DNA from: Chiloscyllium plagiosum
Taxonomy: Eukaryota
Reading direction: 5' to 3'
Length of the DNA: 38,347 nucleotides
Assembly (NCBI RefSeq): GCF_004010195.1
Contig: NC_057717.1
Coordinates: forward strand, 73,622,087 to 73,660,433
In this document: in pieces, positions 3,036 to 33,390 of the stretch
How positions within the stretch are numbered: the stretch's first letter is position 1
How the letters are laid out: each line of letters starts with the position of its first letter
Notes under the pieces: model-generated
Told to the model about the DNA's origin: nothing
What the model saw: only the letters and a program-made list of their open reading frames with translations
Database searches by the model: none
Program-made: the position numbers and the translations under genes

Positions 3036-3249
3036 AGGAGAAAGTGAGGTCTGCAGATGCTGGAGATCAGAGCTGAAAATGTGTTGCTGGAAAAGCGCAG
3101 CAGGTCTGGCAGCATCCAGGGAACAGGAGAATCGACGTTTCGGGCATAAGCCCTTCTTCAGGAAGAAGGGCTTATGCCCGAAACGTCGATCCTCCTGTTC
3201 CCTGGATGCTGCCTGACCTGCTGCGCTTTTCCAGCAACACATTTTCAGC
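3036..3249. mobile_element. Short fold-back (palindromic) PLE-end-derived element
   Basis: Arms 3070-3159 and 3162-3251 are 90-bp inverted repeats with 2 mismatches. It is flanked by a 15-bp direct repeat tcaga(t/c)gtaactatg (3021-3035 / 3250-3264). The sequence matches the 3' terminus of the GIY-YIG-coding PLE fragment at 26045-26172. Confidence 0.85.
3129..3166 (-). ncRNA. Minimal type-I hammerhead ribozyme motif (PLE-type)
   Basis: The minus strand reads CTGAAGA-A-GGGC-TTAT-GCCC-GAAACGTC-gattc. This gives core CUGANGA, a 4-bp stem II, GAAA, a palindromic ACGU helix III and a GUC cleavage triplet. Stem I is weak. Confidence 0.7.
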
Positions 3250-4099
3250 TCAGACGTAACTATGTAAAGTAAAAAGTTTTATTTTGTGAGCCACACAGGC
3301 AGATCATAAGGCATAGGACATACAGATCATAGGGTATTTAAATACATAAAATTGAGGTTTAAAGGTGTGGATGATTTGTAATATATGGGAAGATCAGATC
3401 AGCTGTAGAGAGTGCACGAAAAATCGACCGATGTCAAAGCCATTTCCTCGGCTCCTTGGAGCCTGTTAGATTTATCCTGCTAATACCAATTCGGGTTATG
3501 CATACTTCTTCTAAAAAACATGTGTGATGTCATCGATGCTTAATAAACGAGCATAACCATGCAAAATGACTGCAGACAACCTTGTTCACTCTGTCCGTTC
3601 ATTTTACTTTTTTGTTTGTCGGTTTAGTTTTAGCTTTTTTTCTGTTTTTCTACTAACTTACCTTCTGGAGAGTGGCGGCAGCGGTATTCAGCTCAATGAA
3701 TTTGGCTGCCGGTTGATGAGTACGTGCAAAGCAATGGCTGACGGCCTGACCGGGACTTTGGGGGTGTTCCCTATGACCAGAGTGCATATCAAAGTCAATG
3801 ATGAGGGACTGCATGGACAACGCCTGGATCAGGACTTTCACAGTCCAGTGTGAGGCACAGGTAATGATACCAGGAGCAAGACTAACGTGGTGATGTAGCT
3901 TCTCCCAACATCTGCAGCAAAGTCGAGGCCAGTGGAAATTGAGTCAGTGTGGGAGATTGTTTGCCAAACTGGAGAATGTTGCGCCCTCGTCAGACCTTCA
4001 GTCCCAGCAAATCAACATTTAAAAAGGATCAAATCAAAAATCAATATCAATTCGATGATCTAACAAAATACATGAAATGTTTTCCTTTATATGATATCA

Positions 4100-4945
4100 A
4101 AATATGTACCAGGAAGGTTATCAAATCCTTGATCAGCTGGCGAAGTGAGCTGAGAAATGATAAATGGAGTTTAATATAGATAGGCGTGTGGTCTTGCGTT
4201 TTGGGATTTAAAATCAAGGCAGGAATTTCCTGTTGAATGATTGAACCTTAGGGAGTGGAGTATAGCAAAGTGATCTTGGAATTCAGGTGCACTGTTCTCT
4301 GAAAGTTGAGTCACAAGTAGACAGAGCAGTGAAGAAGGCTCTTGGTACACTGGCCTTTATCGGTGAGGGCATCGAGTATTGAATTTGGGAAGTTATGTTG
4401 CAGTTGTGCAGGACTTTGGGGAGGCCACACTTGAAATATTGCGTTCAGTGTTGGTAACTTGACTACAGGAAGAATGTTATTAAACTGTAAAGATTCAAAA
4501 ATATGTTGAAAGGACTCAACAGCGTGAGTTGCATGGAGAATTAGGACTTTTTGTTTAAAGCATAGGAGGCTGAGGAGGGCTTTTATAGAAGTGCATGTGA
4601 TAATGAGAGTCATGGACAGGGTGAATGCACTCACTATTGTTCCCAGTGTTGTGGAATCGATGAATAGAGAGCATCAGTTTTAGGCAAGAATAAAAGACTA
4701 ACTGAGGGGCAACGTTTTTTACACAGAAGATGGTGTCCATGTACAATGAGCTGCCACTGGAAATGGTTGAGGCGGGTACAGTAACAACACTTAAAAGTCA
4801 TTTGGAAAGATACATGAAAAGGATATATTTGGAAGGATATGTGCAGAGTGCAGAGAAGTGGGCGGAGGGTTGGTGGACAGTTTGGTCAGCATGTACCAGT
4901 TTGTGTTTTCGGACCTGTCTCCGTGCTGTTGGACTCTATGACTCG
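4100..4945 (+). mobile_element. Old, 5'-truncated CR1-clade LINE (RT C-terminus + 3' UTR)
   Basis: Degenerate match to the CR1 ORF2 end seen intact at 8775-9305 (…AVKKA.G.LAFI…GIE…EVMLQL..TL.RPHL.YC…). Ends in a ctatgactc-type tail. Multiple stops and frameshifts. Confidence 0.8.
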
Positions 4946-5174
4946 AAATGAAAATGAAACAGCTTGAAACACAGTTAAAAGCAGAGGGGAAAAAATAAGA
5001 AGAAGGATAGCTCTCGCAGCAGAAAGGAAAATAGAGAGGGGGAGGAGAGAATGGAGGATGAAAGTGAGAGTTTGAACTTTAGATGTTGGGAACGAAAGAG
5101 GAAAAGCTGACATAAAATGGTGCAGGTAGAAAGTAGTCGTCGTGGTGAGGACAGAGATGACGAAAAAAAACATT

Positions 5175-5398
5175 GCTGCAATGGGGTTCAGGCCTCTGGC
5201 ACGGAGCCTGTCCCCGTTGCTCAGAAGGGAAGGGTGGAGAAGAGCAGAGCAATAGTTATTGGGGACTCGATAGTTCGGGGCACAGATAGGCGGTTTTGTG
5301 GGGGCGAGAGAGACTCACGTTTGGTATGTTGCCTCCCAGGTGCAAGGGTACGTGACATCTCTGATCATGTTTTCCGAGTCCTTAAGGGGGAGGGGGAG
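5175..5398 (+). pseudogene. CR1 ORF1 fragment, SGNH/GDSL esterase domain, cut by assembly gap
   Basis: Translation IVIGDSIVRGTDRRFCGGERDSRLVCCLPGARVRD (GDS motif), near-identical to ORF1 at 19740-20345. Confidence 0.85.
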
Positions 5399-6153
5399 NN
5401 NNNNNNNNNNNNNNNNNNNNNNNNNNNNNNNNNNNNNNNNNNNNNNNNNNNNNNNNNNNNNNNNNNNNNNNNNNNNNNNNNNNNNNNNNNNNNNNNNNNN
5501 NNNNNNNNNNNNNNNNNNNNNNNNNNNNNNNNNNNNNNNNNNNNNNNNNNNNNNNNNNNNNNNNNNNNNNNNNNNNNNNNNNNNNNNNNNNNNNNNNNNN
5601 NNNNNNNNNNNNNNNNNNNNNNNNNNNNNNNNNNNNNNNNNNNNNNNNNNNNNNNNNNNNNNNNNNNNNNNNNNNNNNNNNNNNNNNNNNNNNNNNNNNN
5701 NNNNNNNNNNNNNNNNNNNNNNNNNNNNNNNNNNNNNNNNNNNNNNNNNNNNNNNNNNNNNNNNNNNNNNNNNNNNNNNNNNNNNNNNNNNNNNNNNNNN
5801 NNNNNNNNNNNNNNNNNNNNNNNNNNNNNNNNNNNNNNNNNNNNNNNNNNNNNNNNNNNNNNNNNNNNNNNNNNNNNNNNNNNNNNNNNNNNNNNNNNNN
5901 NNNNNNNNNNNNNNNNNNNNNNNNNNNNNNNNNNNNNNNNNNNNNNNNNNNNNNNNNNNNNNNNNNNNNNNNNNNNNNNNNNNNNNNNNNNNNNNNNNNN
6001 NNNNNNNNNNNNNNNNNNNNNNNNNNNNNNNNNNNNNNNNNNNNNNNNNNNNNNNNNNNNNNNNNNNNNNNNNNNNNNNNNNNNNNNNNNNNNNNNNNNN
6101 NNNNNNNNNNNNNNNNNNNNNNNNNNNNNNNNNNNNNNNNNNNNNNNNNNNNN
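5399..6153. other. Assembly gap (755 N)
   Basis: Run of n characters. Confidence 1.
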
Positions 6154-6300
6154 CGGACTGTGGGAGGAAACCGGAGCACTCTGAGGAAACCCAGCAGACT
6201 CTGGGAGAATGTGCAAACTCCACACAGACAGTCGCCCAAGGCTGGAATCGAACCTGGGACCCTGGCGCTGTGAGGCAACAGTGCTAACCACTGAGCCGCC
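6154..6300 (-). mobile_element. tRNA-derived V-SINE/HE1-type SINE, 5' half (rest in gap)
   Basis: The minus strand reads ggcggctcagtggttagcactg (A box), ggttcgattcc (B box), then the V-domain-like gtgtggagtttgcacattctccc…ggtttcctcccacagtcc. Confidence 0.85.
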
Positions 6301-6535
6301 CTATGCACCTTGATTAAATCCCACTTATTCTTCTTCTCCGCTCGAAAGAGAACAATCCCAGCATCCCCAGTCTCTCCATATAAATGCAGTCCCTCATTTC
6401 TGGTACCATTCCAGTAAACCCTCCCCAAGGTCTGACATCCTCCCTAAAGCATGAAGCCCAGACACATACAAAATAACCCAACTCAGATCTAACAATGGTT
6501 TTGTAAAGGACAAGTATGATTCCTCAGATTTGTTT
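6301..6535 (-). mobile_element. Degenerate CR1/L2-type LINE RT C-terminal fragment
   Basis: The minus strand resembles the …RFT.MVP.M.GL.Y.ERL..LGLFS.E..R…DLI.V segment of the other LINEs here. Confidence 0.5.
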
Positions 6536-6599
6536 TCTACGTTTCATATGTCAGTGTTATGAACAGATTAAAAAAAAACTTTATCATATAGACATATAT

Positions 6600-6906
6600 G
6601 GGTGGCACAGTGGTTAGCACTGCTGCCTCACAGTGCCAGAGATCCTGGTTCAGTTCCCGCCTCAGGCGACTGTCTGTGTGGAGTTTGTACATTCTCCGTG
6701 TCTGCGTGGCTTTCCTCCGGGTGCTCCGGTTTCCTCCCACAGTCCAAAAATGTGCAGGTTAGGTGAATTGGCCATGTTAATTGCCCGTAGTAGGTGAAGG
6801 GGTAAATGTAGGGGAATGGGTCTGGGTGGGTTGCGCTTCGGCGGGTTGGTGTGGCCTTGTTGGGCCGAAGGGCCTGTTTCCACACTAAGTAAGCTAATAA
6901 AATCTA
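6600..6906 (+). mobile_element. Full-length V-SINE/HE1-type SINE
   Basis: tRNA-like head with A box ggcacagtggttagc and B box ggttcagttccc, followed by the central V domain. The 3' tail gggccgaagggcctgtttccacact is shared with the CR1 LINE 3' ends. Confidence 0.9.
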
Positions 6907-6911
6907 TATTT

Positions 6912-7062
6912 AGAGTTGAGTGTGGGGTCAAGTCAGGCAGCATCCGAGGAGCAGGAGAATCAACGTTTCCTGATGAAGGGCTTATGCCCGAAACGTCGAT
7001 TTTTCTGCTCCAGCACTACACTCTCGACTCTGATCTCCAGCATCTGCAGTTCTCATTTTCTC
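6912..7062 (+). mobile_element. Short partially fold-back PLE-end-derived element
   Basis: An inverted left arm (gtcaggcagcatccgaggagcaggagaatcaacgttt) joins directly to cctgatgaagggcttatgcccgaaacgtcga…ctccagcatctgcagttctcattttctcc. Same family as 3036-3249. TSD not clear. Confidence 0.8.
6966..7001 (+). ncRNA. Minimal type-I hammerhead ribozyme motif
   Basis: CTGATGA (6970-6976)-A-GGGC-TTAT-GCCC-GAAACGTC (6990-6997), with a canonical CUGAUGA core. Confidence 0.75.
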
Positions 7063-7799
7063 CACATATATATAGCAACTATTTGAAAAACACATTAAAA
7101 AAGCCCACGCAATAATGAGCAAGTTGGCTGCTCTAGACACTTCCAGTAATTCTAATCAAATCAAAATTCAGCTCTGGCATGGCTCACCTCCCATTGTGTG
7201 AGCATTCTAGTATAGGAATAGAAGACGAGATAGGAAGAAATAGAAGGCAATATTTCAGTTCTGAACAAAGGAAACTAGTGAAAGACACTGCGCACAAGCT
7301 GGTGCTAATAACTCCAGGAATCTACTGCAACAACAAATTCTGACCAGGACATCAAAAGCTAACTTGGTAGCTGCCTCAGTTACATTACAAACATATGACC
7401 TGGTCACAATTGCTTTTAAGTATACAATTTTTGATACCGTCCTCTTGGACATCCAAGAGAGAGCGTCTAATTCCCTGTGTTTTCAATGCATTAACACATT
7501 TTGCATTAACCCTAAGTAATTTGCCTTGGGCCATTTTTTAAATTGGCTTTCACAAACAGAGTCTTTGGGTAGACACATGACGGCCTATTTTTTCAAAGAG
7601 AAAAATATTAGAAAAGTCAAACCACCTTTATTTCAGATAGAAGAGGGATGTCGTTCAAAAGTTCCATTCACCTCTCCCTCATGTCTGTGGCATCAGTGTT
7701 CCACTTGCTTCCTGAACCGCCTCATCATCTTTACCTAGAAGGAACTCAAATCTTCACTCCCCAGGCTGCAATGTTTCTGCATCATCCCTCCAATTTAGG

Positions 7800-8022
7800 A
7801 TTAAGTAAAAACTGCAAGAACTGTAGATGCTGTAAATCAGAAACAAGAATAGAAATTGCTAGAAAGGCTCAGCATGTGTGGGAAGAAATCAGAGCTAACA
7901 TTTCTGGTCAAGTGACCCTTCCTCAGACCAGAAATGTGTCACTTGACCAGAAATGTTAACTCTGATTTCTCTCCACAGATGCTGCCAGATCTGCTAAGCT
8001 TTTCCAGCAATTTCTATTTTTG
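7800..8022. mobile_element. Older fold-back PLE-end element, second subfamily
   Basis: Imperfect inverted arms centred near 7925 and a perfect 13-bp TSD cctccaatttagg (7787-7799 / 8023-8035). The minus strand carries a decayed hammerhead CTGAGGA-AG-GGTCA-CT-TGACC-AGAAATGTT. Confidence 0.75.
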
Positions 8023-8277
8023 CCTCCAATTTAGGTGGCGTCCAAGACGATGGTGGAGTAGGGCTCCTGAGCTCAGGGCTCATCTGCTCTGTCTGCTTTC
8101 CTATTTACTCTCTCCTTCCTTTCTTCCCGCCGTCTTACTTAGCTTTTGTACCTATGGTTCTCTGAAGAACTCAGACAGCATCAACGGTGCTGAGTTATCC
8201 CAGCACGGATTAGTAGTGGAGAAGAGTGAGCCTGCACAGACTCGAGTGAGCCATTACTTACTTTTGCAGGGTGAGCA

Positions 8278-9537
8278 CAGGACCCTGTGGTAGACTACTG
8301 CAAAAAATACGGAGGTATGGCATTGAGGGTGAGTTGGAGGTTTGGATTAGGGGTTGGCTGGCTGGAAGAAGACAGAGGGTAGTAGTTGATGGTAAAGTTT
8401 CATCTTGGAATGCAGTTACGAGCGGTGTTCTGCAAGGATCTGTTTTGGGACCATTGCTGTTTGTCATTTTTATAAATGACCTGGAGGAGGGGTTAGAAGG
8501 TTGGGTGAGTAAGTTTGTGGATGATACGAAAGTCGGAGGAGTTGATGGTAAAGTTTCATCTTGGAATGCAGTTACGAGCGGTGTTCTGCAAGGATCTGTT
8601 TTGGGACCATTGCTGTTTGTCATTTTTATAAATGACCTGGAGGAGGGGTTAGAAGGTTGGTTGAGCAAGTTTGCGGATGATACGAAGGTCGGTGGAGTTG
8701 TTGACAGTGAGGAAGGATGTGTCAGGTTACAGCGGGATATAGATAAGCTACAGAGCTGAGCAGAAAGGTGGCAAATGGAGTTCAATGTGATTCACTTTGG
8801 TAAGAGTAACAAAAAGATGGGGTACTGGGCTAATGGTCGGATACTTGGTAGTGTGGATGAGCAGAGGGATCTTGGTGTCCAAGTACACAGATCTCTGAAA
8901 GTTGCCACCCAGGTACATAGTGCGGTGAAGAAGGCTTATGGCGTACTGGGTTTTATTGGTCGAGGAATTGAGTTCCGCAATCCTGAGGTCATGTTGCAGT
9001 TGTATAAGACTCTGGTGCGGCCGCATCTGGAGTGTTGTGTGCAGTTTTGGTCGCCATACTATAGGAAGGATGTGGAGGCACTGGAACGGGTGCAGAGGAG
9101 GTTTACCAGGATGCTGCCTGGTATGGTAGGAAGATCGTATGAGGAAAGGCTGAGGCACATGGGACTGTTTCCATTGGAGAAAAGAAGGTTTAGTCGTGAC
9201 TTGATAGAGGTGTACAAGATGATTAGGGGTTTAGATAGGCTTCACCATGAGAACCTTTTCCACGTATGTAGTCAGCTGTTAGGAGGGGACATAGCTTTAA
9301 ATTAAGGGGTATTAGATATAGGACAGATGTTCGGGGTAGATTCTTTACTCAGCGAGTCGTGAGCTCATGGAATACCCTGCCAGTAGCAGTGGTGGACTCT
9401 CCCTCTTTATGGGCATTTAAACGGGCATTGGATAGGCATATGGAGGATAGTGGGCTAGTGGAGGTTCGGTGGGCTTGGATCGGCGCAACATCGAGGGCCA
9501 AAGGGCCTGTACTGCGCTATATTTTTCTATGTTCTAT
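8278..9537 (+). mobile_element. 5'-truncated CR1-clade LINE (RT domain + 3' UTR) with internal 156-bp duplication
   Basis: ORFs 8271-8759 and 8775-9305 contain [27 protein letters not shown] and RPHLECCVQFWSP. The tail ends gggcctgtactgcgct…tctatgttctat. Confidence 0.95.
8385..8696 (+). repeat. Tandem in-frame 156-bp duplication of the RT catalytic segment
   Basis: Units 8385-8540 and 8541-8696 differ at 5 positions, all in the last ~38 bp. Confidence 0.95.
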
Positions 9538-9559: not shown

Positions 9560-12500
9560 ACCTCTTTGAAGGGTCAAAGTGTTCGGAAATTTTGATGAGA
9601 AGGAAGTAGAAGCGTTTTCGTTTCATTTGAGAAAGTGACTGAACAAATGAAATGGCCGGCATCCATTTGGATCATGTTAATTCAAACAAAGTTGACAGCT
9701 AGAGCTAGTGTGGTGTTTGCATCGTTATCAGAGGACGTATTTGGGGAGTATGATGAGGCGAAAAAAGACGTCTGAAGTTCAAATGAACTTGTGCAGAAAG
9801 CCTGGAGACAATATTTTAGAAATTTAAGGACAGAACTTGTTCAAACGTAGATGGAGTTTGAAAGCATCCAACAAGGTCACTTTAATTGTGGGAAAGTGCA
9901 TTGAAAGTAAATCAGACATATGATCCTCTTTTAGAGACTGTTAATTTGGAGGAGTTCAAAATTCACTTTCTGGAATATTGTGGACTCGGGACGATGAGCA
10001 CAGTTAGAAGTGCAAGTTTCGCAGAAGAAATGGCAAATGATTATGAATTAGCTCATAAATCCAAGTTTGTTTTCCGACATCAATTTCAATCTGTGCTAAT
10101 CGTAAATTGTGGAAAAGCGAAATCCTCAGGTGCTGAGGGCAAAAATAGTAAGGATAGTTTACCACAAACTAAAAAGTAAACCGATGAGTAGGGAAAGAGA
10201 AGTGAAAAACCTCAGGTGTTTTGGCTGTCATAAAGTAGGACACATGAAGTCGCCATATTGGTGGTTTAACGAAGCACTGTTAAAGCAGATATGGTAAATT
10301 GTGGGATTTAGGAAAATGGTGATTAACATACATATGGAAATCGAAGAACGGCAAAAGGCTGGTCAGGTGTTGGTTTTTACGGAAGTATCAGATCTCTTTT
10401 TAAAAAGATCTGTTTAGGATAGGTTTACTCATGGGTACCAATAGCTGTAGGTGAAAAAAAAATAGCATTTTAAGAGATACAGGTGTAAGTGAACCTGTCC
10501 CAGCGAGAAATGAGGAGTTATGCACTCTGGAAGAAGTATTGTCAGAAAAGGTGGCAATATGTGTAGAAGAGTAGTCCTCCATTACATAAAGTGATATTGG
10601 AGAGTCTGGAAAAAAGTGGTGAATTGGTTGATTGTCAGAGCAAAAGTGAAATTCTGTTCTGAAAATACAGTCTCCTTGGAAATGATCTTGCTGGATCATG
10701 AGTGTGAGCAATGTATTGAAAAGCGAGTGGAAAATTAAGGAAGTATTGTATAGCATGGGATTTTAACTGGCTGCGTGGTAAAACTGTCCCCAAGACCTCA
10801 GGTTGAATTAGGAAGAAATATTAAGAAATAAAGATATTGATTACCGAAAACTACGTTTGATCAAATGTTTGAGACAAAATGAAGAGGAACAGTTGAAAGA
10901 CAAAGTAGGTATTTCTTCTAATTCAGGGAAGTTAGCTGCATTACAAAAAAAAGATGAAAAACTCAATTAGTTATGTCAAAAGACGTACACTGAAAATGAA
11001 CCTGGAATGTGACTGTTTTGAAACTGAATTCTCGATGAGAAAATTGAGACGATTACATATTCACAATAATGACAAATGGGCGGGAGTTTGGAAGTATGAC
11101 TGCTGTTTGATTATAGAAATAAAGTGTTGTGAATGCTTTATGCAAAAAAGGCATCAGCAGGTGGTCATTTGTGTGAGACGCTCGCAATATAATAAATTTC
11201 CATCCCAGTCAAATTCTGAAGCAGCGAATTTTATTGAAACATTCTTGCAAGAAGGGGTGCCTAGACACACCGATCCAGAAATTACTCCACAATTTATACA
11301 GTTTAATTATCGAGATTGACTGCATGCTCAAACGCTACATAATTGAAGTATGTTGCTGTAAGTGGAGCACATCGTGATGGGAGCAAAACCAATGCATGAT
11401 TACCCAAAATTAAAAGGCTTTATGAAATCTGATTTTTGACACATTCCACTAATGGAAGACTGTGTTAAGAAGGTGGGACAAGCAATTTATATTTCGAAGC
11501 TGCAGTTACTCAAAGGATACTTGTAGGTAAAATTATGTGAGAGAGCGAAGGAAATTTCAACTTCTAAGATACTGAATGATCTCTGCTAGTTTATGTTTAT
11601 GCTATTTAGTATGAGAAATGCACCAGCAACCATTTAAAGTCTAAACATTAAAGACATTTCGGGATTATCCAATTGTGTGGTGTACATAGAAAATTTAATG
11701 CTTTTGCGTCACACATAAAAGGAACATTGGGAACAGGCATCATAATTGTTTGAGCGTCTTCAGAAGGCAGGCTTGGTGATAAACTCGGAGACAGTGAGGG
11801 CTGCAGGTGCTGGAGATCAGAGTTGAGAGTGTGTTGTGGAAAAGCACAGCAGGTCAGGCAGCATCGACGATCAGGAAAATCGATGTCTCGGGTCAGAGCT
11901 CTTCATCAGTAATGAGCTCATTCGTGATAAACTCACTGAGAGTGAGTTCGCAAAATCCCAAATTCTTTAGACATGTGGCTGGATGTGAAAACAATGATCA
12001 TTGGAGAATTTCCCATACCATGAGAAAAAGGGAAGTGCAATGATTCCGTGGACTGGATTTTTTTTAATCAAACATCCATGCCAAATTTTAGCAACATTTT
12101 TGCTTCACCGACTCACTTGTTGAAATATTGCAGAAAATTTCAGTGGATTGAAAAATGTCAGAGCCATTTTTCAGCCTGAAATCTGTGTTAACCATTGCCC
12201 CTAATTAGTCAAAGACATTCAAAGTGCTTGCTGATGCGAGTCTTTTGAGTGTCAGTGCTGTAATCTTGCAAGATGACAACGAAATGATGGGAAGACCCAT
12301 TGGGTATTCTTCCTGAAAGTTCAATATTCATCAATAGAAATATTACAAAATTCAAAAGGTGATGTCGAGTTTGATGTTGGCGCTGCAACTTGTCAATGTT
12401 TCTGTGGCTAGAAATGTGGCAGAGCTAATTGTATTTCGTGATCATAAAGTCTTAACGTATTTGCATGCTTTAGACGAAGTGTATCTTTGCAACTATTTAA

Positions 12501-12600
12501 TTTGCAAATTATATATGAGGTAGGACGAGAGAACATAATTGCTGTCACATTGTCGTGACTTTGATGAAGGAAGGCAGCTGTGCTTGGTGGCGAATGAAAC
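9560..12600 (+). mobile_element. Degenerate Ty3/Gypsy LTR retrotransposon internal region, Gmr1-like (gag-PR-INT-RT-RH order)
   Basis: gag: KFDEKEVEAF…FEKV.EQMKWP…W..LIQTKL..RA…ELV..AWRQYFRNL, LEEFK, and knuckle CFGCHKVGH (~10217-10250). Protease: ILRDTG (10467-10484). Integrase N-terminal remnant: GGHL (~11160). RT: …EKVGQAIYISKL.LLKGY…MRNAPAT…CVVYIE (11360-11700). RNase H: ADAS…AVILQ, RPIGY, ENIIAVTLS (12225-12560). No integrase follows the RNase H. Many stops and frameshifts. Confidence 0.8.
11787..11923 (-). mobile_element. Short PLE-end-derived element inserted in Gypsy RT
   Basis: 11-bp TSD gtgataaactc (11776-11786 / 11924-11934). Decayed hammerhead CTGATGA-agagctctgaccc-GAGACATC on the minus strand. 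Ends in the micro-palindrome aatgag|ctcatt. Confidence 0.8.
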
Positions 12601-12629
12601 AGACTAAATGGACTCTATTAAATGTTTGA

Positions 12630-12834
12630 GGAGAAAGTGAGGTCTGCAGATGCTGGAGATCAGAGCTGAAAATGTGTTGCTGGAAAAGCGCAGCAGGTCA
12701 GGCAGCATCCAGGGAACAGGAGAATCGACGTTTCGGGCATAATTCCTGAAGAAGGGCTTATGCCCGAAACGTCGATTCTCCTGTTCCCTGGATGCTGCCT
12801 GACCTGTTGCGCTTTTCCAGCAACACATTTTCAG
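12630..12834. mobile_element. Short fold-back PLE-end-derived element
   Basis: Inverted arms of about 77 bp and a 17-bp TSD ctctattaaatgtttga (12613-12629 / 12835-12851). Near-identical to 3036-3249 but with a different inversion junction. Confidence 0.88.
12741..12778 (+). ncRNA. Minimal type-I hammerhead ribozyme motif
   Basis: aattc-CTGAAGA (12746-12752)-A-GGGC-TTAT-GCCC-GAAACGTC (12766-12773)-gattc. Confidence 0.72.
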
Positions 12835-12983
12835 CTCTATTAAATGTTTGAATGCTAATGATCAATGTGATGTATATGTACATGTATCATAGTGTACTAA
12901 CAGCAGAAGACTAAAGGTATTTTCTTGAAATGAAGCTATCTTTGGATATTTATTGGTTATTTCAATGCGTTCGAGGTGGTGGT

Positions 12984-13480
12984 TATAATGATACTAGGCT
13001 TTTAGAGGTGTACTTTGTTCATTTTAAAAGAAGGGTTTTGAGTCAGAGGTAAGGAGATTCTCTTCCCAGTCAGTAAATGAAACAGTTTATGAGGCCGTGA
13101 GCTTCCCTTCAATTTTAGAACAATAAAAGCAGCAGGAATGAGTGGTTTAAGACTCCTACAGAACCACGTTTATACCTAATATTTCTGTTATTTCTGGGGT
13201 TTTGAAGTTTGTTGTGAAACCTAGAGTTCTTCCTTTGTGCCCAATATTTTTCTTGGTATTCTGTTTTCCTGGACTGGAGACACATCACATATAACAGAAT
13301 CAATTTGTTAGGTTTTGCCTTTACCAAGTGTGTGTTTATGAGAATTTACTGTATTGGAACAATTGCTATTTATTAATCATATGCTCTGTTACTCTTAAAC
13401 TTAACAATAGAGTTACGTTAGACCAATCCTTCATTCTTTTGTTTGTATTTAACGAGGTGTAACAATAACGTGTACTGCAT
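12984..13480 (+). mobile_element. Probable 3' LTR (5' part) of the Gypsy element
   Basis: Follows the RNase H and a weak purine tract (gaggtggtgg). Its start, tataatgatactaggcttttagaggtgtactttgttc, resembles the start of the solo LTR at 21347 (tgtgatgatgctgcgcctttaacaaggttatattgtcc). Confidence 0.55.
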
Positions 13481-13484
13481 TTTT

Positions 13485-15745
13485 CCAAACATTTGTAGCT
13501 TGGTTTGTGAATGAGGTCGTCGATTCGTTTGCAGTACTGGTGCCGTTTTCTGCAGACGTTATTCGGTCGCTTGGTGACATTGTCAGTTCCTGCTGGAACA
13601 GTGTCGGTAGTCTATCCAATATGTCTTTTTGTTTTTGGTGCTTACGTTTCTGTATGTGCATGGTTTGTGTATGGCGAGCAGTTGTTAATGTGTTTATGGA
13701 TTGAGTTTCAGTTGGATAGCCAGGATTTAAGGAATTCTCTCAAGCGGCGCTGTTTAGACTGTGCTAAGATGGTCACATTTTCTCATTTGACTTCGTATCT
13801 TTCATTGTCTGTGTGACTGGAAATGAGAGAGTACTGGTCGTGTCTGGCAGTGATGAGGTATTGTTCATACACTCGTGTGGTAGTTGTTCTTCCTGTTTGC
13901 CCTATGCCATGTTATCTCACAATTTTTTGCAGAACATCTTGTCGATAACGTTCGTGCTGTTGGGTGTGGTTGTCGGCTTTTAACATTTGTGTGAAAATGG
14001 TGGAAGGTGTTTGCTAATTTGTGGATTCCTAGGGATCTGAGTAGCTGGGTGGTCATTTCTGATATTTCTTTGTTGTATGGTATGTTCACTATCGTGCTTG
14101 GTCGAACACTGTTTTCTTCTTTGGTTTGTTATGTAAGTATTGGAGGATAATATTATTCTAGTAATTGTTTTACTTAAATCCCTTAAATAGGTTATCCTGT
14201 CCTGCCGTCTGGAGTTCTGGTTTGTTGCAGTGTATCCCTGCTCTTTTATCTACTATTCTAATGCAGCGTTCTTTTGGGGGGCTGGCTTGGTTGCTGTTAT
14301 ACTGTAGTATGTGTTTGGCTTTCTTCCTGTACACACTGGTCTGGAGTTCATTGGTAGATATGCGTTCCATGAATATATTCAGGAAGGGGAGTTTTCCTGT
14401 TACTCAGTGAACTTTATTCCAGTGATGATGTTATTGCTGTGGTGGAGGGTTTCTACTAATTAGTGATGACAAAGGTTATCATCTACATACCGGATCCAGA
14501 GTTTGAGTTGGATGTGGAGGAGGGCTGTCCATTCTCAGCGTTGCTTTACTGCTTCCACCATCAGTCCTGATATTGGTGACTGTATTGGTGCACTGTTGAT
14601 TTGTCCGTGCACCTGTCCATTGAATGTAAATTTGGAACTGAAGCAGAGCTCCAATCGTTTTAGCATGTTGTTTTTGTTGATGAGGCTGGTGCCGTCGGGT
14701 GTCCCAGTAACGATTTTGTCCAATTATGTGATAATAGTACTTTTGGCTAGGTCGATGGCTACCAATGGGAAGAGTGTTTTTACATCAAATGAAATCATGG
14801 TTTAGTACTCCTTTATTCTGGAGTTTCTGATGAAGTTAAGTAACACTTGAGTAGAGTGAATGGAGTGTATGGAGAAATCTGTTAGGAGTTTTCGTCTTAT
14901 TTACAACTCCCTGGCTAGCAGGTAGTTATGTGTCCTTGAGATAGGTCTGAGTGAGCTCCTGTTTTGTGTACCTTGTGAGGTCTGTAGAATCAGGGTGTGT
15001 TGGATGTGTCGGGTTTGAACTTTTGTAAGTCTGTTTAGCTCATGTCTCCTGCGCTGTTCAGTTGCTTCATTGTCATGATAATTCTGTTCTCGAGTTGTGG
15101 GGTCGGAACTATCACTACCTGTACGTAAATAGTGGTCTCGCCAAGTAGTTCATTTCCTTTCTCCATGAAGTGGTCTTTGTTCAGCATTATTATCATCCTT
15201 CCTTTGTCCACTTGATGTATAATTATGTTCGTGGTTTTTTGAGTTACTTCCCGGCTATCATTTCTTCTGTAATGATTGTTTTCAAGTTTCTTTTTCTGCT
15301 TAGAGTCGGGTCTATCTGCTTTCTGATAATCTGTTGTGTTTCTCCACCCACTCCACTGTCTTTCAATTTGGCTTCTAGTACTATTAGGAAATTAGTTTAT
15401 CTGGCATCTGTGTAGTTAAATTGCTTTTCCACGTACCAGGATTGATTTTTTCAGGTCTGTGAGTGGTCTGTCTGAGAGGTTCTTTATCCATGTCTCTGCT
15501 TTGTCTGAATGGTTGTTGTGGTGAGTTGTGGAGGCTTCTGCTTTTCGTGCTTCTATTTTCCTACTTCTGGTCCTGTGTTGTGGTAATGATGGCTTCTTCT
15601 AATGGAGTGGTCCACTTGGTGTCGGTGATGTTGGAGTACAGAGTTTGATTGGGTGCAATTTCCTGTTCACATTTGGGGAGATGGTTATGTACACCTGTGA
15701 TCATAACCCTTAGCATTTTGCGGCCATTCTGTTCTGCCGTTCTTA
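13485..15745 (-). mobile_element. Old Penelope/Poseidon-type PLE, 3' part (RT + GIY-YIG + terminal repeat)
   Basis: Minus-strand motifs ISFDVKTLFP (~14780), PIQSPISGLMVEAV, WIRYVDD (~14480), TSVYRK, IPY.KEISE…LLR.LGI and a GIY-YIG remnant homologous to 37726-38301. Decayed hammerhead at ~13550-13590. Confidence 0.85.
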
Positions 15746-15872: not shown

Positions 15873-16176
15873 AGTACAGCACAGAACAGGCCCTTCAGCC
15901 CACGATGTTGTGCCGACCATTGATTCTCGTGTATGCACCCTCAAATGTCTGTGACCTTGCTTCCACAACTACTGCTGGCAACACATTTCATGCTCTCACA
16001 ACTCTCTGTGTAAACAACCCGCCTAGTACAGCACAGAACAGGCCCTTCAGCCCATGATGTTGTGCCGACCATTGATCCTCGTGTATGCACCCTCAAATTT
16101 CTGTGACCTTGCTTCCACAACTACTGCTGGCAACACATTTCATGCTCTCACAACTCTCTGTGTAAACAACCCGCCC
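15873..16176. repeat. 152-bp tandem duplication at the 3' end of CR1 element B
   Basis: Units start at agtacagcacagaacagg (15873 and 16025) and differ at about 3-4 positions. Confidence 0.92.
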
Positions 16177-20514: not shown

Positions 20515-20700
20515 AGTCTTCTTGGCAGCTCGTTGATGACAGGTGGTTTCTATATTAAATTTGGTGCTTGTACCTGTTAATTAATGTATTCATGTAGAAA
20601 GTACAGTTGTTCTCCGGTTGTATTGGCGTTTATCTCCCATCATCTGACTAGTGTGAGGATGTCGCACCATAGATGTTTAGGGTTCTTGCAAAGAATTGAA
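20515..20700 (-). mobile_element. 5' (N-terminal) part of the PLE interrupted by CR1 element A
   Basis: The minus-strand reading …GEQLYFLHE…PPV..RAAK joins across the CR1 to …AEQNGRKMLRVMI at 15700-15742. Confidence 0.65.
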
Positions 20701-25536: not shown

Positions 25537-25957
25537 ATAGAACATAGAAAGAACATAGAAAAATACAGCGCAGTACAGGCCCTTTAGCCCTTGATGTTGC
25601 GCCAATCCAAGCCCACCTAACCTACACTAGCCCACCTAACCTACACTAGCCCACTTAACCTACACTAGCCCACTATCCTCCATATGCCTATCCAATGCCA
25701 GTTTAAATGCCCATAAAGAGGCACTGCTACTGGCAGGGCATTCCATGAACTCACGACTCGCTGAGTAAAGAATCTACCCCTAACATCTGTCCTATACCTA
25801 CCACCCCTTAATTTAAAGCTATGCCCCCTCGTAATAGCTGACTCCATACGTGGAAAAAGGTTCTCATGGTCAACCCTATCTAAACCCCTAATCATCTTGT
25901 ACACCTCTATCAAGTCACCCCTAAACCTTCTTTTCTCCAATGAAAACAACCCCAAGT
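25537..25957 (-). mobile_element. CR1 3' fragment inserted in the PLE; same subfamily as 8278-9537
   Basis: ORF 25665-25955 reads GLFSLEKRRFRGDLIEVYKMIRGLDRVDHENLF. Tail (tctatgt)n. Confidence 0.92.
25610..25674. repeat. 19-bp minisatellite x3.4 (agcccacctaacctacact)
   Basis: Units start at 25610, 25629 and 25648, with a partial unit at 25667. Confidence 0.92.
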
Positions 25958-27336
25958 GCTCACCTATTGTATTCTATGCTACTTTCTCCCCACTCCCACC
26001 CTCCTCTCACTTATCTCTCCACACTTCAGGCTCTCTGCCTGTATTCATGATGAAGGGCTTTTGCCCGAAACGTCGATTTTACTGCTCCTCGGATGCTGCC
26101 TGAACCGCTGTGCTCTTCCAGCACCACCAATCCAGAATCTGGTTTCCAGCATCTGCAGTCATTGTTTTTATTTATTGGAAGAGTAGGACAAGTCTTAAAC
26201 GAGCAATCAAGCAGGCTAAAAGGGATAATGAAATAGCTTTAGTGAGCAGAATTAAGGAGAATCCCTAAACAATTTATTCTTATATAAGAAGCAATCGGGT
26301 AACTAGAGGTCCACTAAAGGATAACGAACCTGATGGAATGGGTGAGATTCTGAATGATTACTTTGCATCAGTGTTCACTGAGGAGAGGAACATAATGAAT
26401 GTTGAGATTAGAGATAAAAGTTTGATTAGTCTGGATTACGTTGACATAAGTAGGGAAGATGCATTGTGTAGGCTAGAGGTTATTAATGTGGACAAACCCA
26501 CAGGACCGGGTGGAATCTATCCCAGGTTGCTGAGGGAGGCGAGAGAGGAAATAGCTGGGGCCCTGACAGATATCTTTGTGGCATCCTTAAATACAGGTGA
26601 AGTGCTGGAGGGCGGGAGGGTGTCTTATGTTGTCTCCCTGTACAAGAAGGGTAGTACGGATATTCCAGGCAACTACAGACCAGTGAGCCTGACGTCAGTG
26701 GTGGGAAAGTTGCTAGAGAGGTTACTGAGGGATCGGACCTATTTATATTTAGAAAATAATGGGCTCATCAGTGATGGGCAAGTGGTATTGTGCGGGGGAG
26801 ATCGTGCCTTACCAACTTAATAGAGTTCTTTGAAGAAGTGACAAAGTTGATAGATAAAGGAAGGGCTGTTGATGTCATATGCATGGACATGAGTAAGGCG
26901 TTTGATAAGGTTCTCCATGGTAAACTAATGGAGAAAGTGAAGTCACATGGTGTGCAGGGTGTTCCTGGAACTGGTTGAGTAACAGGAGACAGAGAGTAGT
27001 AGTTGAAGAGAGTTTCTCGAAATGGAGGAACGTGATGAGTGGTGTTCCACAGGGGTCAGTGTTGGGGACATAAGAAACCGGAATAGGTTACTTTTGGTAT
27101 GATCAGCAAGATTGCAGATGACACGAAGATTGGTGGAGTAGCAGAAAGCATATGGGACTGTCTGAGACGACAGGAGGATATAGGTAGACTGGAGATTTGG
27201 GCGGAAAGGTGGCAGAAAGAGTTCAATCTAGACAAATGTGAGATGACGCATTTAGGCAAGATTAATTTGAGAGCGAATTATGCAATGAAAGGAAAAGCCT
27301 TGGGTAAAGTTGATGGGCAGAGAGATCTGGAAGTAT

Positions 27337-30040: not shown

Positions 30041-31329
30041 AATCAATCACGATTCGAGCTCTTTATAACAAGCGAGGGAGAGGCCCAGAGGCACTCCGAA
30101 TCTGGACAATGCGTGCTACCTAATCGCTCTCTTAATATTCAGCTCAGACCAGAAGAGAGGTCAATTACACTTTAATTTGCCTCGGGGGATATAGCATTTC
30201 TATACATTTTGCATTAAAATAATTGCATGCAACATTGTCGTTGGTCTTTGCACTTTTATCTGGACAACCAATCCTGTTAAACACCTGATCAATGATGGAC
30301 GCCCCTGTGAGCAGGCCGAGGTTCCCCACCATTTCATGATGTTTCCCAGACATTGTAATCATCGATTCTGAGATCTTACAATGTATCCCATTAAATCGCA
30401 TTCCAAAGTGCATGGTAATATTCCTCTGGACATTTACCAGAATTGCTCATCTCTAAGCATTATTCGAATTATGATATTCATTTTATTAATTGATATCCCT
30501 ATCAAATACTCATCTTATGTTTCCCACTGTCCTATTCACCGGGAAAACAGAAGGAAGTTAGTTATTACTATAATTGCTATACAATTCACATTATTTATTC
30601 TTCTATACAGTTAATTATATGTAAACGTTTAAGTTGACACGTGCTCTGAACATTGTTTAGCTATTGAGTTGTGAGTGTTTTTTGTCCCACCTAATATCGG
30701 AGGCTCAGTTAGTTACTTCCTGTGTACCTTGCATTATAACTCATTCTAGACAAATGCTATCTTCCTGGATTCAATTTATTGGCACTGTTCTGACTAACTC
30801 TTTTTACCTAATAAGACAACAACTTTTTCTTCAGTAAGTCTAAAACTCAATTACTTCCACAGCTTAACGAATTTGTTTGATTTCCTAGAATTTTTACGAG
30901 TTATGATCCCACAGTTATCATTTGTGTCTGTTATTGGTGTGTCCTACTGTTATCTTTAATGCTTGTCACAAACTTAATTACAGACAAAAAAAACTTTGGA
31001 CGCTCGAAATCGATTTAGACAGCATCAGACTCGGACAACACAACAAGCAGGATTTGAAGAAACTCAGGCTGTCTATGCTTAGGCTTATCTTAAGAAATTA
31101 TCTCCTACAGAACTCTGCAGTTGCTGTTTATGCCGAACTCCCTTCATGTTAATTTTGAAAATTCTTTGTTCAAAGTAGATCCTATTATCTTGAGATAGCT
31201 CCTTTTCAAATCTACCATTGTGTGAGCTTATGGTCTCACTTTAATGCTGATTAGGCAAGCTCAACAATGGAAATACAACTATCATTCCTTCAATTTCAGC
31301 AAAACGAAGAGGTGAGTCATCGACTTCAG

Positions 31330-31950
31330 GAAGTGGAGTGGATCCAACGTTCTGGGGTCGCAGTCGCTGAGAGCTTCGAGTTTCTAGACATACATATCAT
31401 CAACAATCTACCCCAATGTATCAACGTTGACTCTACTTCCTCAGAAGGCTAGGATAACTCATCATGTCCACAGTGAATCGCAACAATTTTTATACATGCA
31501 ACGTAGAAAACACCCTGTCCAGATGCAACAGAGCATGAAACGGTAACTGCTCTGTACCAGACAGCAAGAAATTATACAAAAGACAGCCTTCCTTCCATTA
31601 AATCTATCTTCACTACCCAGTGCTTCGGGAAAGCAGCCAAAATATTTTTTTAAAAACACCTACCACCCTGGTTATAATTTCTTCCATCTATTTCTGATGG
31701 GCAAAATATTGAAACGCTTAAAAACATGTTGCCAACAAATTTAAGAACAGCTTCTTCCACTCTCTTATCAGACATATGAACAGACCTCGCACACATTAGA
31801 GTTGATCTTTCTCTGTACATTTTCGGTTACTGTAACACGAGAGTTTGCATTCCGTTCTATTGGCCTGACGTACTTTTATAAGCGATGATTTTAGTACACA
31901 AAACAGTACTGTTTTATTGTATCTACGTACATGTGACAATAATAAATTAT
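31330..31950 (+). mobile_element. Rex1/Babar-like 3' fragment
   Basis: …ESFEFL.IHI.NNL…, …FYTC.VE..LS.C…, …FKNSFF..IR, ending gtacatgtgacaataataaat. Colinear with 29480-30040. Confidence 0.6.
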
Positions 31951-32856
31951 AAGTCAAAATTCAAACTAACTTTAGCAGAGCAAATTTAAGCAGTAAGGTA
32001 ATCTAAGTGATGTCTACGATTTAATCCAAATAACCTTTGTTTTCAGTCCCATTCACACAAAAGACATTAAAGATAAATAAACATTGCAAAGGGATTAGAA
32101 AAAAGAAACTAACAAAACTGACTAGAATGCCAGGAGTTTACATGAGGTACTGTTCAACAGGCATCTTTCCTAAAGATATTCGTTAGGCCTAGCTTCTCAG
32201 TTCATTCTGAGGAAGTCAGTGATATTCAAATTTCTATTGCCTTAACATCAAATAGCTGTTAATTGCAGGTTGGGCAGGGAGTGTTTAACTCCACAGGCTG
32301 CAGCATCAACAGCCAAATTCCTTCACACAGAAAACACAGTTTAATTCCAGGGTCAAACTCTGGTCTCTCCATTTCACACTGACCAGTCTCAACGAGGTCC
32401 CAGTTAACAGTCAACATTTAACATCTGCTTGAACACAAAGCTTATCCTATAATATCGGTGACCAATCCCCATGCACTGACCCTGGTAAGCGCCATTATCT
32501 GCTATCTGTTGAAACAGACTGCCCTTCTCTGGTGTTGACGATTCTGTATAACTTGTTGGTCAGTAACCAACTGCAATTAACTTCCAGGCTGGCCTCACAA
32601 GTAAACTACAGCTTGCTTGGCCTGTTCTGCTTTTTAAACATTAACTGATATCCACAATGGAAAGATCATCTTCAGCTCGCAATTCGCAATCCACGGCTCC
32701 AAAGCTAAGTCGATAATGTAAAGCAACATCAAAATGAAAACTCAACGAGGATTCTACCAATATATGTTATAAACTACAGCAAACCGCTTTCAAGTAAGGA
32801 AAGGAGACATTAACTTTTATGTCATTTAAAGGCAAGCATAAAATGGTTTGTTCCGA

Positions 32857-33390
32857 TGTGGCAATGCTGTCCCTTTAACAGGTTAAATTGTCCTTTTTTT
32901 TCAAAGAGAGATCGTAAAGACAGAGGTGCTGAACTGTCTCGAACGAGCCAAGTGTAGCACTGACAGGGGAGTGGGAGAAAGTGAGGACTGCTGTTACTGG
33001 AGACCAGAGTTGAAAAGTGTGGCGTTGGAGAAGACCAGCAGGTAAAGCAATGAACAAGGAGCAGGAGAATCGACATTGAGGACTCAAGCACTTCAGGAGG
33101 AATCTTGCAGGGGAGTGGCAAGTTCTCCAACTTCAGTATTTTCTACTTTGGTTTTGTTGCAGCAGAGGTGGTCCTGAAGTGAAAAGGGTCCATGCTTCAG
33201 CAAATGATCACTTCCTGACTTTCTCTCTGTAATTTCTCCAGCCTGCAAGAAACTGTGTTTGAATGTGTCTTTTGTAAATGGGTGTGTTCATGGCATGTTG
33301 CAGGTATTGGAAAAGCTCCTCAGTTATGTTGTGCAATGGAGCAGGTTGATTTTCTAAAAAGGTAAGTTATTCTAAATTCTTTTGTTTGTC
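32857..33390 (+). mobile_element. LTR (5' part), related to the solo LTR at 21347
   Basis: Begins TGtggcaatgctgtccctttaacaggttaaattgtcc, versus TGtgatgatgctgcgcctttaacaaggttatattgtcc at 21347. Interrupted by a mini-PLE and then by CR1 element D. Confidence 0.62.
32975..33107 (-). mobile_element. Old short PLE-end-derived element
   Basis: 11-bp TSD caggggagtgg (32964-32974 / 33108-33118). Homologous to 3036-3165 and ends just beyond the decayed hammerhead position. Confidence 0.78.

What the first reader, a model, noticed from the sequence alone, without database searches (positions are those of the whole stretch)
3036..33107. Family of hammerhead-anchored fold-back mini-retroelements: every 5' end or inversion point falls on the ribozyme
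Seen in sequence: six short non-coding insertions (3036-3249, 6912-7062, 7800-8022, 11787-11923, 12630-12834, 32975-33107). Each consists only of the last ~130 nt of a PLE, and five have clear 11-17 bp TSDs. In all six, the 5' truncation or inversion junction lies within or just upstream of the hammerhead motif. The junctions differ by copy: ...cttcag|gaagaaggg at 3161; acgttt|cctgatga at 6968; ~7925; aatgag|ctcatt at ~11916; gggcata|attcctgaaga at 12741; ~33103. Different junctions imply the hairpin is made anew at each insertion rather than copied from one master palindrome. Established knowledge: PLEs carry minimal hammerheads and often have inverted 5' segments. Inference: the ribozyme fold or its cleavage sets where reverse transcription stops or switches template, yielding a SINE-like class of ribozyme-centred hairpins.
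Basis: partly seen in the sequence, partly recalled or inferred. Interest (0 to 1): 0.8.

Follow-up and report, generated by a model that had tools for sequence, protein, structure and literature searches.

The report
Shark mini-Penelope elements ending at a hammerhead
These are very short, hugely abundant copies of one end of a shark Penelope-like retrotransposon, often inserted as fold-backs; their inner end lies beside a hammerhead ribozyme motif, most likely because the copied RNA begins there and not because the ribozyme cuts or blocks.

Summary
The six listed stretches are real repeats: five of family A and one (7800-8022) of a sister family B. Five have clear 11-17 bp target-site duplications. 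All six inner ends or inversion points lie from 14 nt before to 21 nt after the start of a minimal hammerhead motif.

A third-family fold-back (34124-34891) has its junction about 365 nt from its own hammerhead.

Public contigs of this shark and a relative show an enormous family, 85,000-123,000 contigs laid per run. It has three sharp edges: two alternative 3' ends about 30-34 nt apart and a 5' edge 4 nt before the ribozyme core. Junctions are very diverse.

None of the arm ends sits at the predicted cleavage site. Complete arms contain the whole ribozyme, so neither cleavage nor a fold roadblock explains the main edge.

Best reading: target-primed copies of the Penelope module between the RNA's 5' end and the two internal reverse-transcription start sites. 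Fold-backs arise from priming on both nicked strands. These features match published Penelope biology, so this is a new variant of a known kind.

The scan holds 65 notes with the words hammerhead and Penelope; the titles I saw describe similar elements elsewhere in this genome.

The parts
3021..3035 (.). c1 left target-site duplication
   Evidence: 15 bp, 1 mismatch against 3250-3264
3036..3161 (-). c1 long arm (family A): hammerhead motif plus 126-nt module with tail. Inner end +1.
   Evidence: Strict motif at 3138-3161.
3162..3249 (+). c1 short arm, lacking the roughly 34-nt tail. Inner end +3, with a 3-nt overlap (gaa).
   Evidence: (93-nt arms, 97% complementary)
3250..3264 (.). c1 right target-site duplication
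6914..6969 (-). c2 short arm. Inner end +21.
6970..7063 (+). c2 long arm, with an internal deletion and an intact CTGATGA...GAAAC motif. Inner end +1, or -3 if the ttc overlap is counted.
7800..7925 (-). c3 long arm (sister family B), with its own hammerhead motif CTGAGGA..GAAAT and tail
   Evidence: 13-bp duplication at 7787-7799 and 8023-8035.
7926..8022 (+). c3: an 11-nt filler that repeats part of the arm, then the short arm starting in stem II
11787..11923 (-). c4, single-arm copy with long tail. 7 homologous nt lie upstream of the core, followed by 4-7 extra nt that mirror them. The core has a GAGAC substitution.
   Evidence: An organism B contig crosses 11786/11787 (table 8).
12613..12629 (.). 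c5 left target-site duplication
   Evidence: 17 of 17 against 12835-12851
12630..12741 (-). c5 long arm. Inner end +14, in loop II.
12742..12834 (+). c5 short arm. It starts 4 nt before CTGAAGA, which is also the genome-wide 5' edge.
   Evidence: Loose ends at 12742/12743 in three runs.
26048..26170 (+). c7, the unlisted seventh copy. It is a divergent subfamily with ATGATGA in place of the core and a long tail. It continues upstream, possibly from 25960.
32975..33107 (-). c6, an old single-arm copy (75% identity) with a decayed hammerhead. 11-bp duplication at 32964-32974 and 33108-33118.
34124..34453 (-). Family C fold-back, long-tail arm (endonuclease ORF end, hammerhead, tail)
   Evidence: 13-bp duplication at 34111-34123 and 34892-34904, read.
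34454..34891 (+). Family C fold-back, short-tail arm. It reaches 190 nt further into the ORF, so the junction is about 365 nt from its hammerhead.
37633..38347 (-). Family C Penelope-like copy that runs off the window. The GIY-YIG-type ORF has its stop inside hammerhead stem II, followed by the long tail.

Best explanation
Families A and B are extremely short insertions of a Penelope-like (Poseidon-type) retrotransposon. Each arm is the module that runs from a fixed 5' edge, 4-8 nt before a minimal hammerhead motif, to one of two reverse-transcription start zones. The short start lies 88-93 nt after the motif's first base and the long start 124-126 nt after it.

Shown here:
- the arms and their duplications;
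- the two 3' end classes;
- the 5' edge in the window and in public contigs;
- the great abundance;
- the diversity of junctions.

Inferred mechanism:
1. The element's endonuclease makes nicks 9-17 bp apart.
2. Each 3'-OH can prime cDNA at an internal start site.
3. [quoted passage not shown]
4. One priming event gives a single arm. Priming on both strands gives two head-to-head cDNAs, joined with 0-3 nt of overlap. This is a fold-back bounded by one duplication, with the tail on one side only.

On this reading the ribozyme marks the junction because it sits at the start of the template. It does not cut or block. Why the RNA starts there is open. My preferred guess, at about 35%, is a transcription start at the A 4 nt before the core.
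For: Census and anatomy:
- 7 loci and 11 arms.
- Outer ends fall in two classes, 124-126 (7 arms) and 88-93 (4 arms).
- All 5 fold-backs in the window pair one long and one short arm: c1, c2, c3, c5 and family C. Under independent choice the chance is at most 0.5^5 = 0.03.
- Single duplications of variable length bound whole fold-backs.
- Complete arms end between +2 and -8. None of the 11 arm ends is at the cleavage site.

Public contigs:
- 85,000-123,000 contigs were laid per DNA run.
- The listed loose ends lie at 12628-12630 (long end), 12669/12673 (short-end zone) and 12742/12743 (5' edge, 533-589 contigs per run), besides 12665/12672, which I read as subfamily divergence.
- Flank consensus agreement is low, at 0.33-0.37.
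- 14 of 15 listed joints arrive at 12741-12745. 995 joints were recorded in all.

Literature:
- Frangieh 2024 (PMC11167929, main text read): the enzyme cuts and extends both strands. There are two internal start sites, and the tail is the sequence between them. The hammerhead lies just upstream. Cleavage is not needed, and uncleaved RNA is the main substrate.
- Craig 2021 (PMC8557442, passages): 5' truncation, an adjacent inverted copy, and a 30-40 bp tail at one end only.
- Schostak 2008 (PMC2377424, passages) together with Cervera 2014: in Drosophila virilis Penelope the transcript starts 46 nt before an intron whose end abuts the hammerhead.
Against: - No family A copy in the window is attached to an ORF. 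Its autonomous parent was not seen.
- The 5' edge at 12742 is also where the reference arm itself ends. Longer copies are clipped there too. The last consensus letters (CCTC in all three runs) show that a subset, by my rough estimate at least about 15%, runs on upstream, as c7 does.
- The listed joints have sides of only 20-30 nt, which the tool itself flags as weak.
- In c5 the long arm is the truncated one, while in c1, c2 and c3 it is the short arm. No simple order of events fits all four.
- The initiator-like match at the edge is a 7-nt degenerate motif (recalled consensus YYANWYY) and could be chance.
- No RNA evidence exists: 0 reads of the RNA run were laid.
Confidence: 0.6

Rival explanations
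1. The ribozyme's fold, or its self-cleavage, makes the reverse transcriptase stop or switch template, so ends and inversions fall on it.
For: All six listed copies have ends within -14 to +21 of the motif. Three truncated arms stop in or at stem II: c2 at +21, c5 at +14, c3 at about +11. The Anolis hammerhead is protein-assisted, so the protein sits nearby.
Against: - None of the 11 arm ends is at the cleavage site, and no listed loose-end peak lies there.
- Complete arms contain the whole motif plus 4-8 nt, so the enzyme had already passed it.
- In vitro, core mutants do not change the insertion products.
- The folding energy of the module is no better than that of shuffles (z = 0.06).
- The family C fold-back switches about 365 nt away from its hammerhead.
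- Listed genome-wide joints spread over 12652-12709.
Confidence: 0.15
2. The palindromes arose after insertion. Either a second copy inserted into the hammerhead DNA of a first copy, or a DNA-level hairpin or central deletion rearranged an older perfect palindrome.
For: Long palindromes are prone to central deletions. The c1 and c5 centres could each be derived from a longer perfect palindrome by a 10-17 nt loss (read).
Against: One duplication bounds both arms together, and no internal duplication exists. The arms always differ by the tail (5 of 5). 0-3 nt overlaps and an 11-nt filler look like template switching. 995 distinct joints were recorded.
Confidence: 0.08
3. A retrozyme-like lineage that is cleaved by its hammerheads, circularised, and copied from circular RNA.
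For: Li et al. 2026 (bioRxiv 10.64898/2026.07.22.740005; abstract, Results part 1 and Discussion read) argue that animal non-LTR retrozymes derive from Penelope terminal regions and include monomers.
Against: No head-to-tail array of the element exists in the window. Ends are fixed, not permuted, and none lies at the cleavage site. A single minimal motif with a 1-bp helix III is expected to need a partner.
Confidence: 0.05
4. A MITE-like DNA transposon copied from a master palindrome.
For: Two copies are near-perfect palindromes of similar size.
Against: Single-arm copies with duplications exist (c4, c6). Duplication length varies from 9 to 17 bp. The arms are asymmetric and the junctions differ. 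Related families sit next to a Penelope-type ORF.
Confidence: 0.02

Closest known systems
Penelope-like element insertions (5'-truncated, with an adjacent inverted copy and a 30-40 bp tail); Poseidon of Anolis (Craig 2021; Frangieh 2024)
   Same: A minimal hammerhead lies just upstream of two alternative 3' ends about 30-34 nt apart. The tail is on one side only. Copies are inverted head to head. Duplication length varies. Flanks are AT-rich.
   Different: Here the dominant form is only about 90-215 bp. It has a sharp 5' edge 4-8 nt before the ribozyme and is extremely abundant. No ORF-bearing parent of family A was seen.
Minimal hammerheads of Penelope-like elements (Cervera and de la Pena 2014)
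   Same: CUGANGA and GAAA boxes, an extra nucleotide before stem II, the G10.1-C11.1 pair, and the palindromic ACGU in place of helix III. That paper noted that most motifs are single and 'probably truncated PLEs', and that some pairs lie on opposite strands 100-700 bp apart.
   Different: Here the two motifs of a pair are adjacent or partly missing, and the junction was mapped. Helix I has at most 3 pairs. Activity is untested.
Animal non-LTR retrozymes (Cervera and de la Pena 2020; Li et al. 2026 preprint)
   Same: Short, non-coding, hammerhead-bearing, derived from Penelope terminal regions, and non-autonomous.
   Different: Retrozymes are head-to-tail tandem arrays that give circular RNA. 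These are dispersed single arms or fold-backs with duplications, and no array is present.
L1 5' inversions by twin priming (recalled: Ostertag and Kazazian 2001)
   Same: Both nicked target strands prime cDNA. The result is an inverted 5' part inside one duplication, joined at microhomology.
   Different: In L1 the two parts come from different stretches of one RNA. Here both arms copy the same stretch, each from an internal start site.
SINEs (for example Alu, or tRNA-derived SINEs)
   Same: Size, copy number, and dependence on another element's reverse transcriptase.
   Different: No tRNA-like part, no A-tail, and a hammerhead motif. Fold-back forms are common.

Membership tests
Penelope-like element insertion | Terminal module contiguous with an RT/GIY-YIG ORF | tested here: inconclusive
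   Family C: yes. The ORF at 37729-38346 is 88% identical to a Chiloscyllium protein, and its relatives are named GIY-YIG. Its stop lies in stem II. Pfam gave no hit. Families A and B: no copy in the window is attached to an ORF.
Penelope-like element insertion | 30-40 bp tail present at one end only, reflecting two reverse-transcription start sites | tested here: met
   Outer ends fall at 124-126 or 88-93. All 5 fold-backs pair one of each. Genome-wide loose ends lie at 12629/30 and at about 12659-12669.
Penelope-like element insertion | 5' truncation and an adjacent inverted 5'-truncated copy within one variable-length duplication | tested here: met
Minimal hammerhead of Penelope-like elements | CUGANGA and GAAA boxes around a stem II of at least 4 bp, with the G10.1-C11.1 pair and one extra nucleotide before it | tested here: met
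   Met in 3 of 6 family A copies (c1, c2, c5) by the strict pattern, and in 3 family C copies with a 3-bp stem. Family B was read by eye. c4, c6 and c7 carry core substitutions.
Minimal hammerhead of Penelope-like elements | Palindromic 15.2-16.2 (dimer helix III) and an NUH cleavage triplet | tested here: met
   GAAACGTC in families A and C. Family B has GAAATGTT, which is not palindromic.
Minimal hammerhead of Penelope-like elements | Helix I | tested here: inconclusive
   At most 3 of the first 4 positions can pair, and mini-copies carry only 4-8 nt upstream.
Minimal hammerhead of Penelope-like elements | Self-cleavage | not testable with these tools
   No assay is possible. No RNA reads were laid.
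Rfam hammerhead families | Match to a curated covariance model | tested here: not met
   No hammerhead match at gathering score or at E <= 10.
Non-LTR retrozyme | Head-to-tail tandem repeats, each with a hammerhead | tested here: not met
   Tandem Repeats Finder reports no array of the element.
MITE | Terminal inverted repeats with a fixed short duplication, and no single-arm forms | tested here: not met
   Duplications of 9-17 bp, single-arm copies, and asymmetric arms.
tRNA-derived SINE | tRNA-like head | tested here: not met
   ARAGORN finds nothing in the window.

The most novel reading that the evidence does not exclude
The stretch from the transcript start through the hammerhead to the reverse-transcription entry site is a self-sufficient replicon. 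On this reading it carries an internal Pol II start at the A 4 nt before the ribozyme core. Every new mini-copy would then regenerate a template that the Penelope enzyme can enter internally. That would explain the sharp 5' edge and copy numbers of roughly 10^5-10^6 in bamboo-shark-like genomes. The fold-backs would be in vivo records of one integration complex priming on both target strands from the two adjacent start sites.
Probability: 0.25. Interest if true: 0.7.

Novelty: new variant of a known kind. Interest (0 to 1): 0.5.

Why it matters
Little is known about how Penelope-like elements integrate. The only biochemical study reports extension of both target strands and two internal start sites in vitro. 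A family with this many tiny, cleanly bounded insertions is a natural archive of integration events. It offers one-arm and two-arm products, start-site choice, junction overlaps and fillers.

It also bears on what the hammerhead does. Here the inserted copies come from uncleaved RNA. If the 5' edge is a transcription start, the ribozyme would remove the capped end of the transcript, which can be tested.

For shark genomics, a repeat present about once per 5 kb in this window needs proper annotation.

Tried and rejected
- Rfam, at gathering score and at E <= 10. It gave no hammerhead, only weak miRNA-hairpin matches on the palindromes. I rejected those as a side effect of the fold-back.
- Thermodynamic test of the module. 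z = 0.06, so there is no support for an unusually stable fold.
- Consensus fold. A conserved long-range stem appears (GGATGCTG with CAGCATC), but with little covariation. Recorded only in passing.
- Coding test. The frames through the module are not kept between c1/c5 and c7 (read). I therefore treat the module as non-coding in family A.
- Search for the parent. The flanks of c7 are LINE fragments, and no ORF is attached.
- More shark loci through the look-up of encoding contigs.
- Metagenome scan with a 19-nt stretch. All 48 loci are chance matches of 22-26 nt.
- RNA evidence. The single-cell RNA run gave 0 laid reads, so this is no test.
- Empty site of c5 in the related species. An organism B contig stops at 12612 and the rest was not listed, so this is unresolved.
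- A downstream-promoter-element reading of GAAACGTC. Only 5 of 8 letters fit the RGACGTGY motif quoted in Schostak 2008, so I rejected it.
- Symmetric pairing of two cDNAs at stem II as the cause of the junctions. The observed centres are not at loop II, so I rejected it.
- Literature searches. They found no description of these shark elements or of junction mapping at the hammerhead. Dfam and Repbase could not be consulted.
- Supplements were closed and not requested. Those of Cervera 2014, Frangieh 2024 (Fig. S2) and Li 2026 (the cartilaginous fish sampled) may bear on novelty.

Full report
**Gap first.** The window has one run of N, 5399-6153. The nearest elements are c1, whose right duplication ends at 3264, and c2, which starts at 6905. 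No element or duplication touches the gap. Each element is judged on its own flanks, so nothing here depends on continuity across the gap, and I did not test that continuity. The DNA right of the gap (6154-6301) is the inverted partner of a SINE-like repeat at 6600-6740 and is unrelated to the finding.

**The observation.**
- BLASTN with 3036-3161 and an nhmmer profile built from the 11 aligned arms find the same seven loci and nothing else below E = 1.
The seventh, 26048-26170, was not listed.
- 7800-8022 is only 68-76% like the others and is a sister family B.
- c1 and c5 are young. All four of their arms are 97.7-99.1% alike, within and between copies.
- c4, c7, c2 and c6 are older, at 69-83% identity to c1's long arm.
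- Duplications: c1 15 bp (1 mismatch), c3 13, c4 11 (14 with 1 mismatch), c5 17, c6 11, c2 9 (1 mismatch, weak), c7 none clear.
- In each fold-back a single duplication bounds both arms.

**The hammerhead.**
- A strict pattern (CTGAnGA, a stem II of at least 3 bp, then GAAA) hits c1, c2 and c5 and three family C sites. Family B has CTGAGGA..GAAAT, read by eye. c4, c6 and c7 carry core substitutions.
- The motif shows traits that Cervera and de la Pena 2014 list for Penelope minimal hammerheads (text read). These are an extra nucleotide before stem II, the G10.1-C11.1 pair, and a palindromic ACGU where helix III would be.
- Helix I has at most three pairs.
- Rfam gives no hammerhead at any threshold tried.
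- The module folds no better than shuffles (z = 0.06).
- The motif is therefore of the published Penelope type. Its activity is unknown.

**Ends in the window**. Numbering starts at the C of CTGAnGA (+1), and the predicted cut is after +28.

| Feature | Positions |
|---|---|
| Outer (3') ends, long class | 124-126 (seven arms) |
| Outer (3') ends, short class | 88-93 (four arms) |
| Inner ends, fold-backs | c1 +1 / +3; c2 +1 / +21; c5 -4 / +14; c3 +2 / about +11 after an 11-nt filler |
| Inner ends, single arms | c4 -14 (homologous to -7); c6 -8 (homologous to -4) |

- Single-arm copies (c4, c6, c7) have the long end.
- Every fold-back pairs one long and one short arm: c1, c2, c3, c5, and the family C fold-back 34124-34891. 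That is 5 of 5. Independent choice gives at most 0.5^5 = 0.03.
- c7 runs on upstream.
- In each fold-back one arm reaches about +1 to -4 and the other is 2-20 nt shorter. They are joined with 0-3 nt of overlap (gaa in c1, ttc in c2, a in c5).
- None of the 11 arm ends is at +29.
- The family C fold-back has its junction inside the endonuclease ORF, about 365 nt from its hammerhead. 'Every inversion on the ribozyme' therefore does not hold for all Penelope families here.

**Public data**. I laid 11600-13000 (c4 and c5) against contigs of two runs of the same species (X1, X5) and one run of a related species (X13), plus one raw RNA run (X22).
- X22 laid no read, so it is no test.
- The DNA runs laid 84,939-123,495 contigs, almost all on the two elements. 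Summed word depth is about 10^7 on 12634-12727 against about 6-12 in unique bins. The tool warns that this is no copy number.
- The window's own density is 7 loci in 37.6 kb.
- The listed loose ends (18 rows of 1,893) fall at these places:

| Place | Contigs | Flank consensus agreement | Reading |
|---|---|---|---|
| 12628-12630 | 967-1,576 per run | 0.33-0.34, AT-rich | long 3' end |
| 12669 / 12673 | 339 in X1, 377 in X13; none listed for X5 | 0.40-0.42 | consensus shows flank changing to element at about 12659-12663: short-end zone |
| 12665 / 12672 | 74-430 per place and run | 0.52-0.71 | subfamily divergence, not an end |
| 12742 / 12743 | 533-589 per run at 12742 | 0.35-0.37 | 5' edge |

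- The 5' edge is also where the reference arm stops, so longer copies are clipped there too.
- All three runs give CCTC as the last four letters before it, and similar letters for about 17 nt. c7's upstream letters resemble them by eye. A subset therefore continues upstream. My rough estimate from the low agreement is 15-30%. Most do not share an upstream sequence.
- No listed row lies at the cleavage site.
- Of 15 listed joints (995 in all), 14 run from places spread over 12652-12709 in the antisense arm to 12741-12745. Five of them leave only the tail (12652-12665). Their sides are 20-30 nt, which the tool flags as weak.
- The same joint occurs in 1-6 contigs per run and in both species. Junctions are very diverse, with some recurrence.
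- The letters at the mirror places 12712 and 12788 are minority variants: about 36% in the window's species and 6% in the relative. This marks a young subfamily that expanded in the window's lineage.
- An organism B contig crosses 11786/11787, so c4 predates the split of the two species.

**Published background.**
- Craig 2021 (passages) lists 5' truncation, an adjacent inverted 5'-truncated copy, and a 30-40 bp tail often at one end only as standard Penelope features.
- Frangieh 2024 (main text) makes several points for the Anolis element:
  - The protein cuts and extends both target strands.
  - Reverse transcription starts at two internal sites, and the tail is the sequence between them.
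  - The hammerhead lies just upstream, at the pLTR/ORF junction.
  - Core mutants do not change the insertion products.
  - No RNA reads begin or end at the cut site.
- Schostak 2008 (passages) places the Drosophila virilis Penelope transcript start 46 nt before an intron. By Cervera 2014 that intron ends at the hammerhead's helix I.
- Li et al. 2026 (abstract, Results part 1, Discussion) derive animal retrozymes from Penelope terminal regions.

**Reading.** The elements are target-primed copies of the Penelope module that lies between the template RNA's 5' end and the two internal start zones.
- One priming event gives a single arm.
- Priming on both nicked strands gives two head-to-head cDNAs joined by end-to-end switching or microhomology. 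This is a fold-back with one duplication and the tail on one side.
- The geometry fits. On the top strand the left arm begins with the reverse complement of a start site, and the right arm ends at one.
- The junction lies on the ribozyme because the ribozyme sits within about 30 nt of the template's 5' end.
- Cleavage is excluded as the cause of the edge. A fold roadblock is unlikely, since the complete arms include the entire motif.
- Pausing at stem II could still bias where the shorter arm stops. Three of the four in the window stop there.
- Why the RNA starts 4-8 nt before the core is inferred only. The A at 12742, with the preceding CCTC, fits the recalled initiator consensus YYANWYY. This is weak evidence.

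**Limits.**
- The parent of family A was not found.
- A metagenome scan gave only chance hits.
- Dfam, Repbase and paper supplements were not available.
- The genome-wide statements rest on short contigs and on the rows the tool chose to list.

**Verdict.** The causal role given to the ribozyme is not supported. The structures are what published Penelope biology predicts, taken to an extreme of shortness and copy number. I rate this a new variant of a known kind, with interest 0.5.

Noticed in passing
window 34111-34904: A fold-back of a third Penelope family (C), bounded by a 13-bp duplication. The arms carry the end of the endonuclease ORF, a hammerhead and a tail. The left arm has a 36-38 nt longer tail. 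The junction lies in the ORF, not at the ribozyme.
   Followed up: partly
window 37633-38347 (-): A family C copy that runs off the window. Its GIY-YIG-type ORF ends with a stop codon inside hammerhead stem II. Its best protein relatives are uncharacterised proteins of Chiloscyllium, Hemiscyllium, Rhincodon and Stegostoma. Pfam gives no hit.
   Followed up: partly
window 12712 and 12788 (mirror places in c5): Both arms of c5 (and of c1) carry a minority letter, about 36% of summed depth in the window's species against about 6% in the related species. This marks a young subfamily that expanded in one lineage.
   Followed up: partly
family A module, e.g. window 3036-3161 (-): A conserved long-range pairing (GGATGCTG just after the hammerhead with CAGCATC in the tail) encloses the short start zone. 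It is kept in families A and B and in c7, but with little covariation.
   Followed up: partly
window 6154-6301 and 6600-6740: An inverted pair of a SINE-like repeat (98-nt arms, 86% complementary). The left copy abuts the N gap. ARAGORN calls no tRNA.
   Followed up: no
window 8384-8700: A 156-bp tandem duplication (2 copies, 96% matches) inside a LINE reverse-transcriptase fragment. It repeats the motif around FxDD.
   Followed up: no
window 15873-16175 and 25610-25673: A 152-bp two-copy tandem repeat next to a LINE 3' part, and a 19-bp repeat with 3.4 copies in another LINE tail.
   Followed up: no
window 20691-20798 (-) and 13688-13901 (-): Old, decayed family C remnants. One has a degenerate hammerhead-like box and the other is a piece of the endonuclease region.
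   Followed up: no
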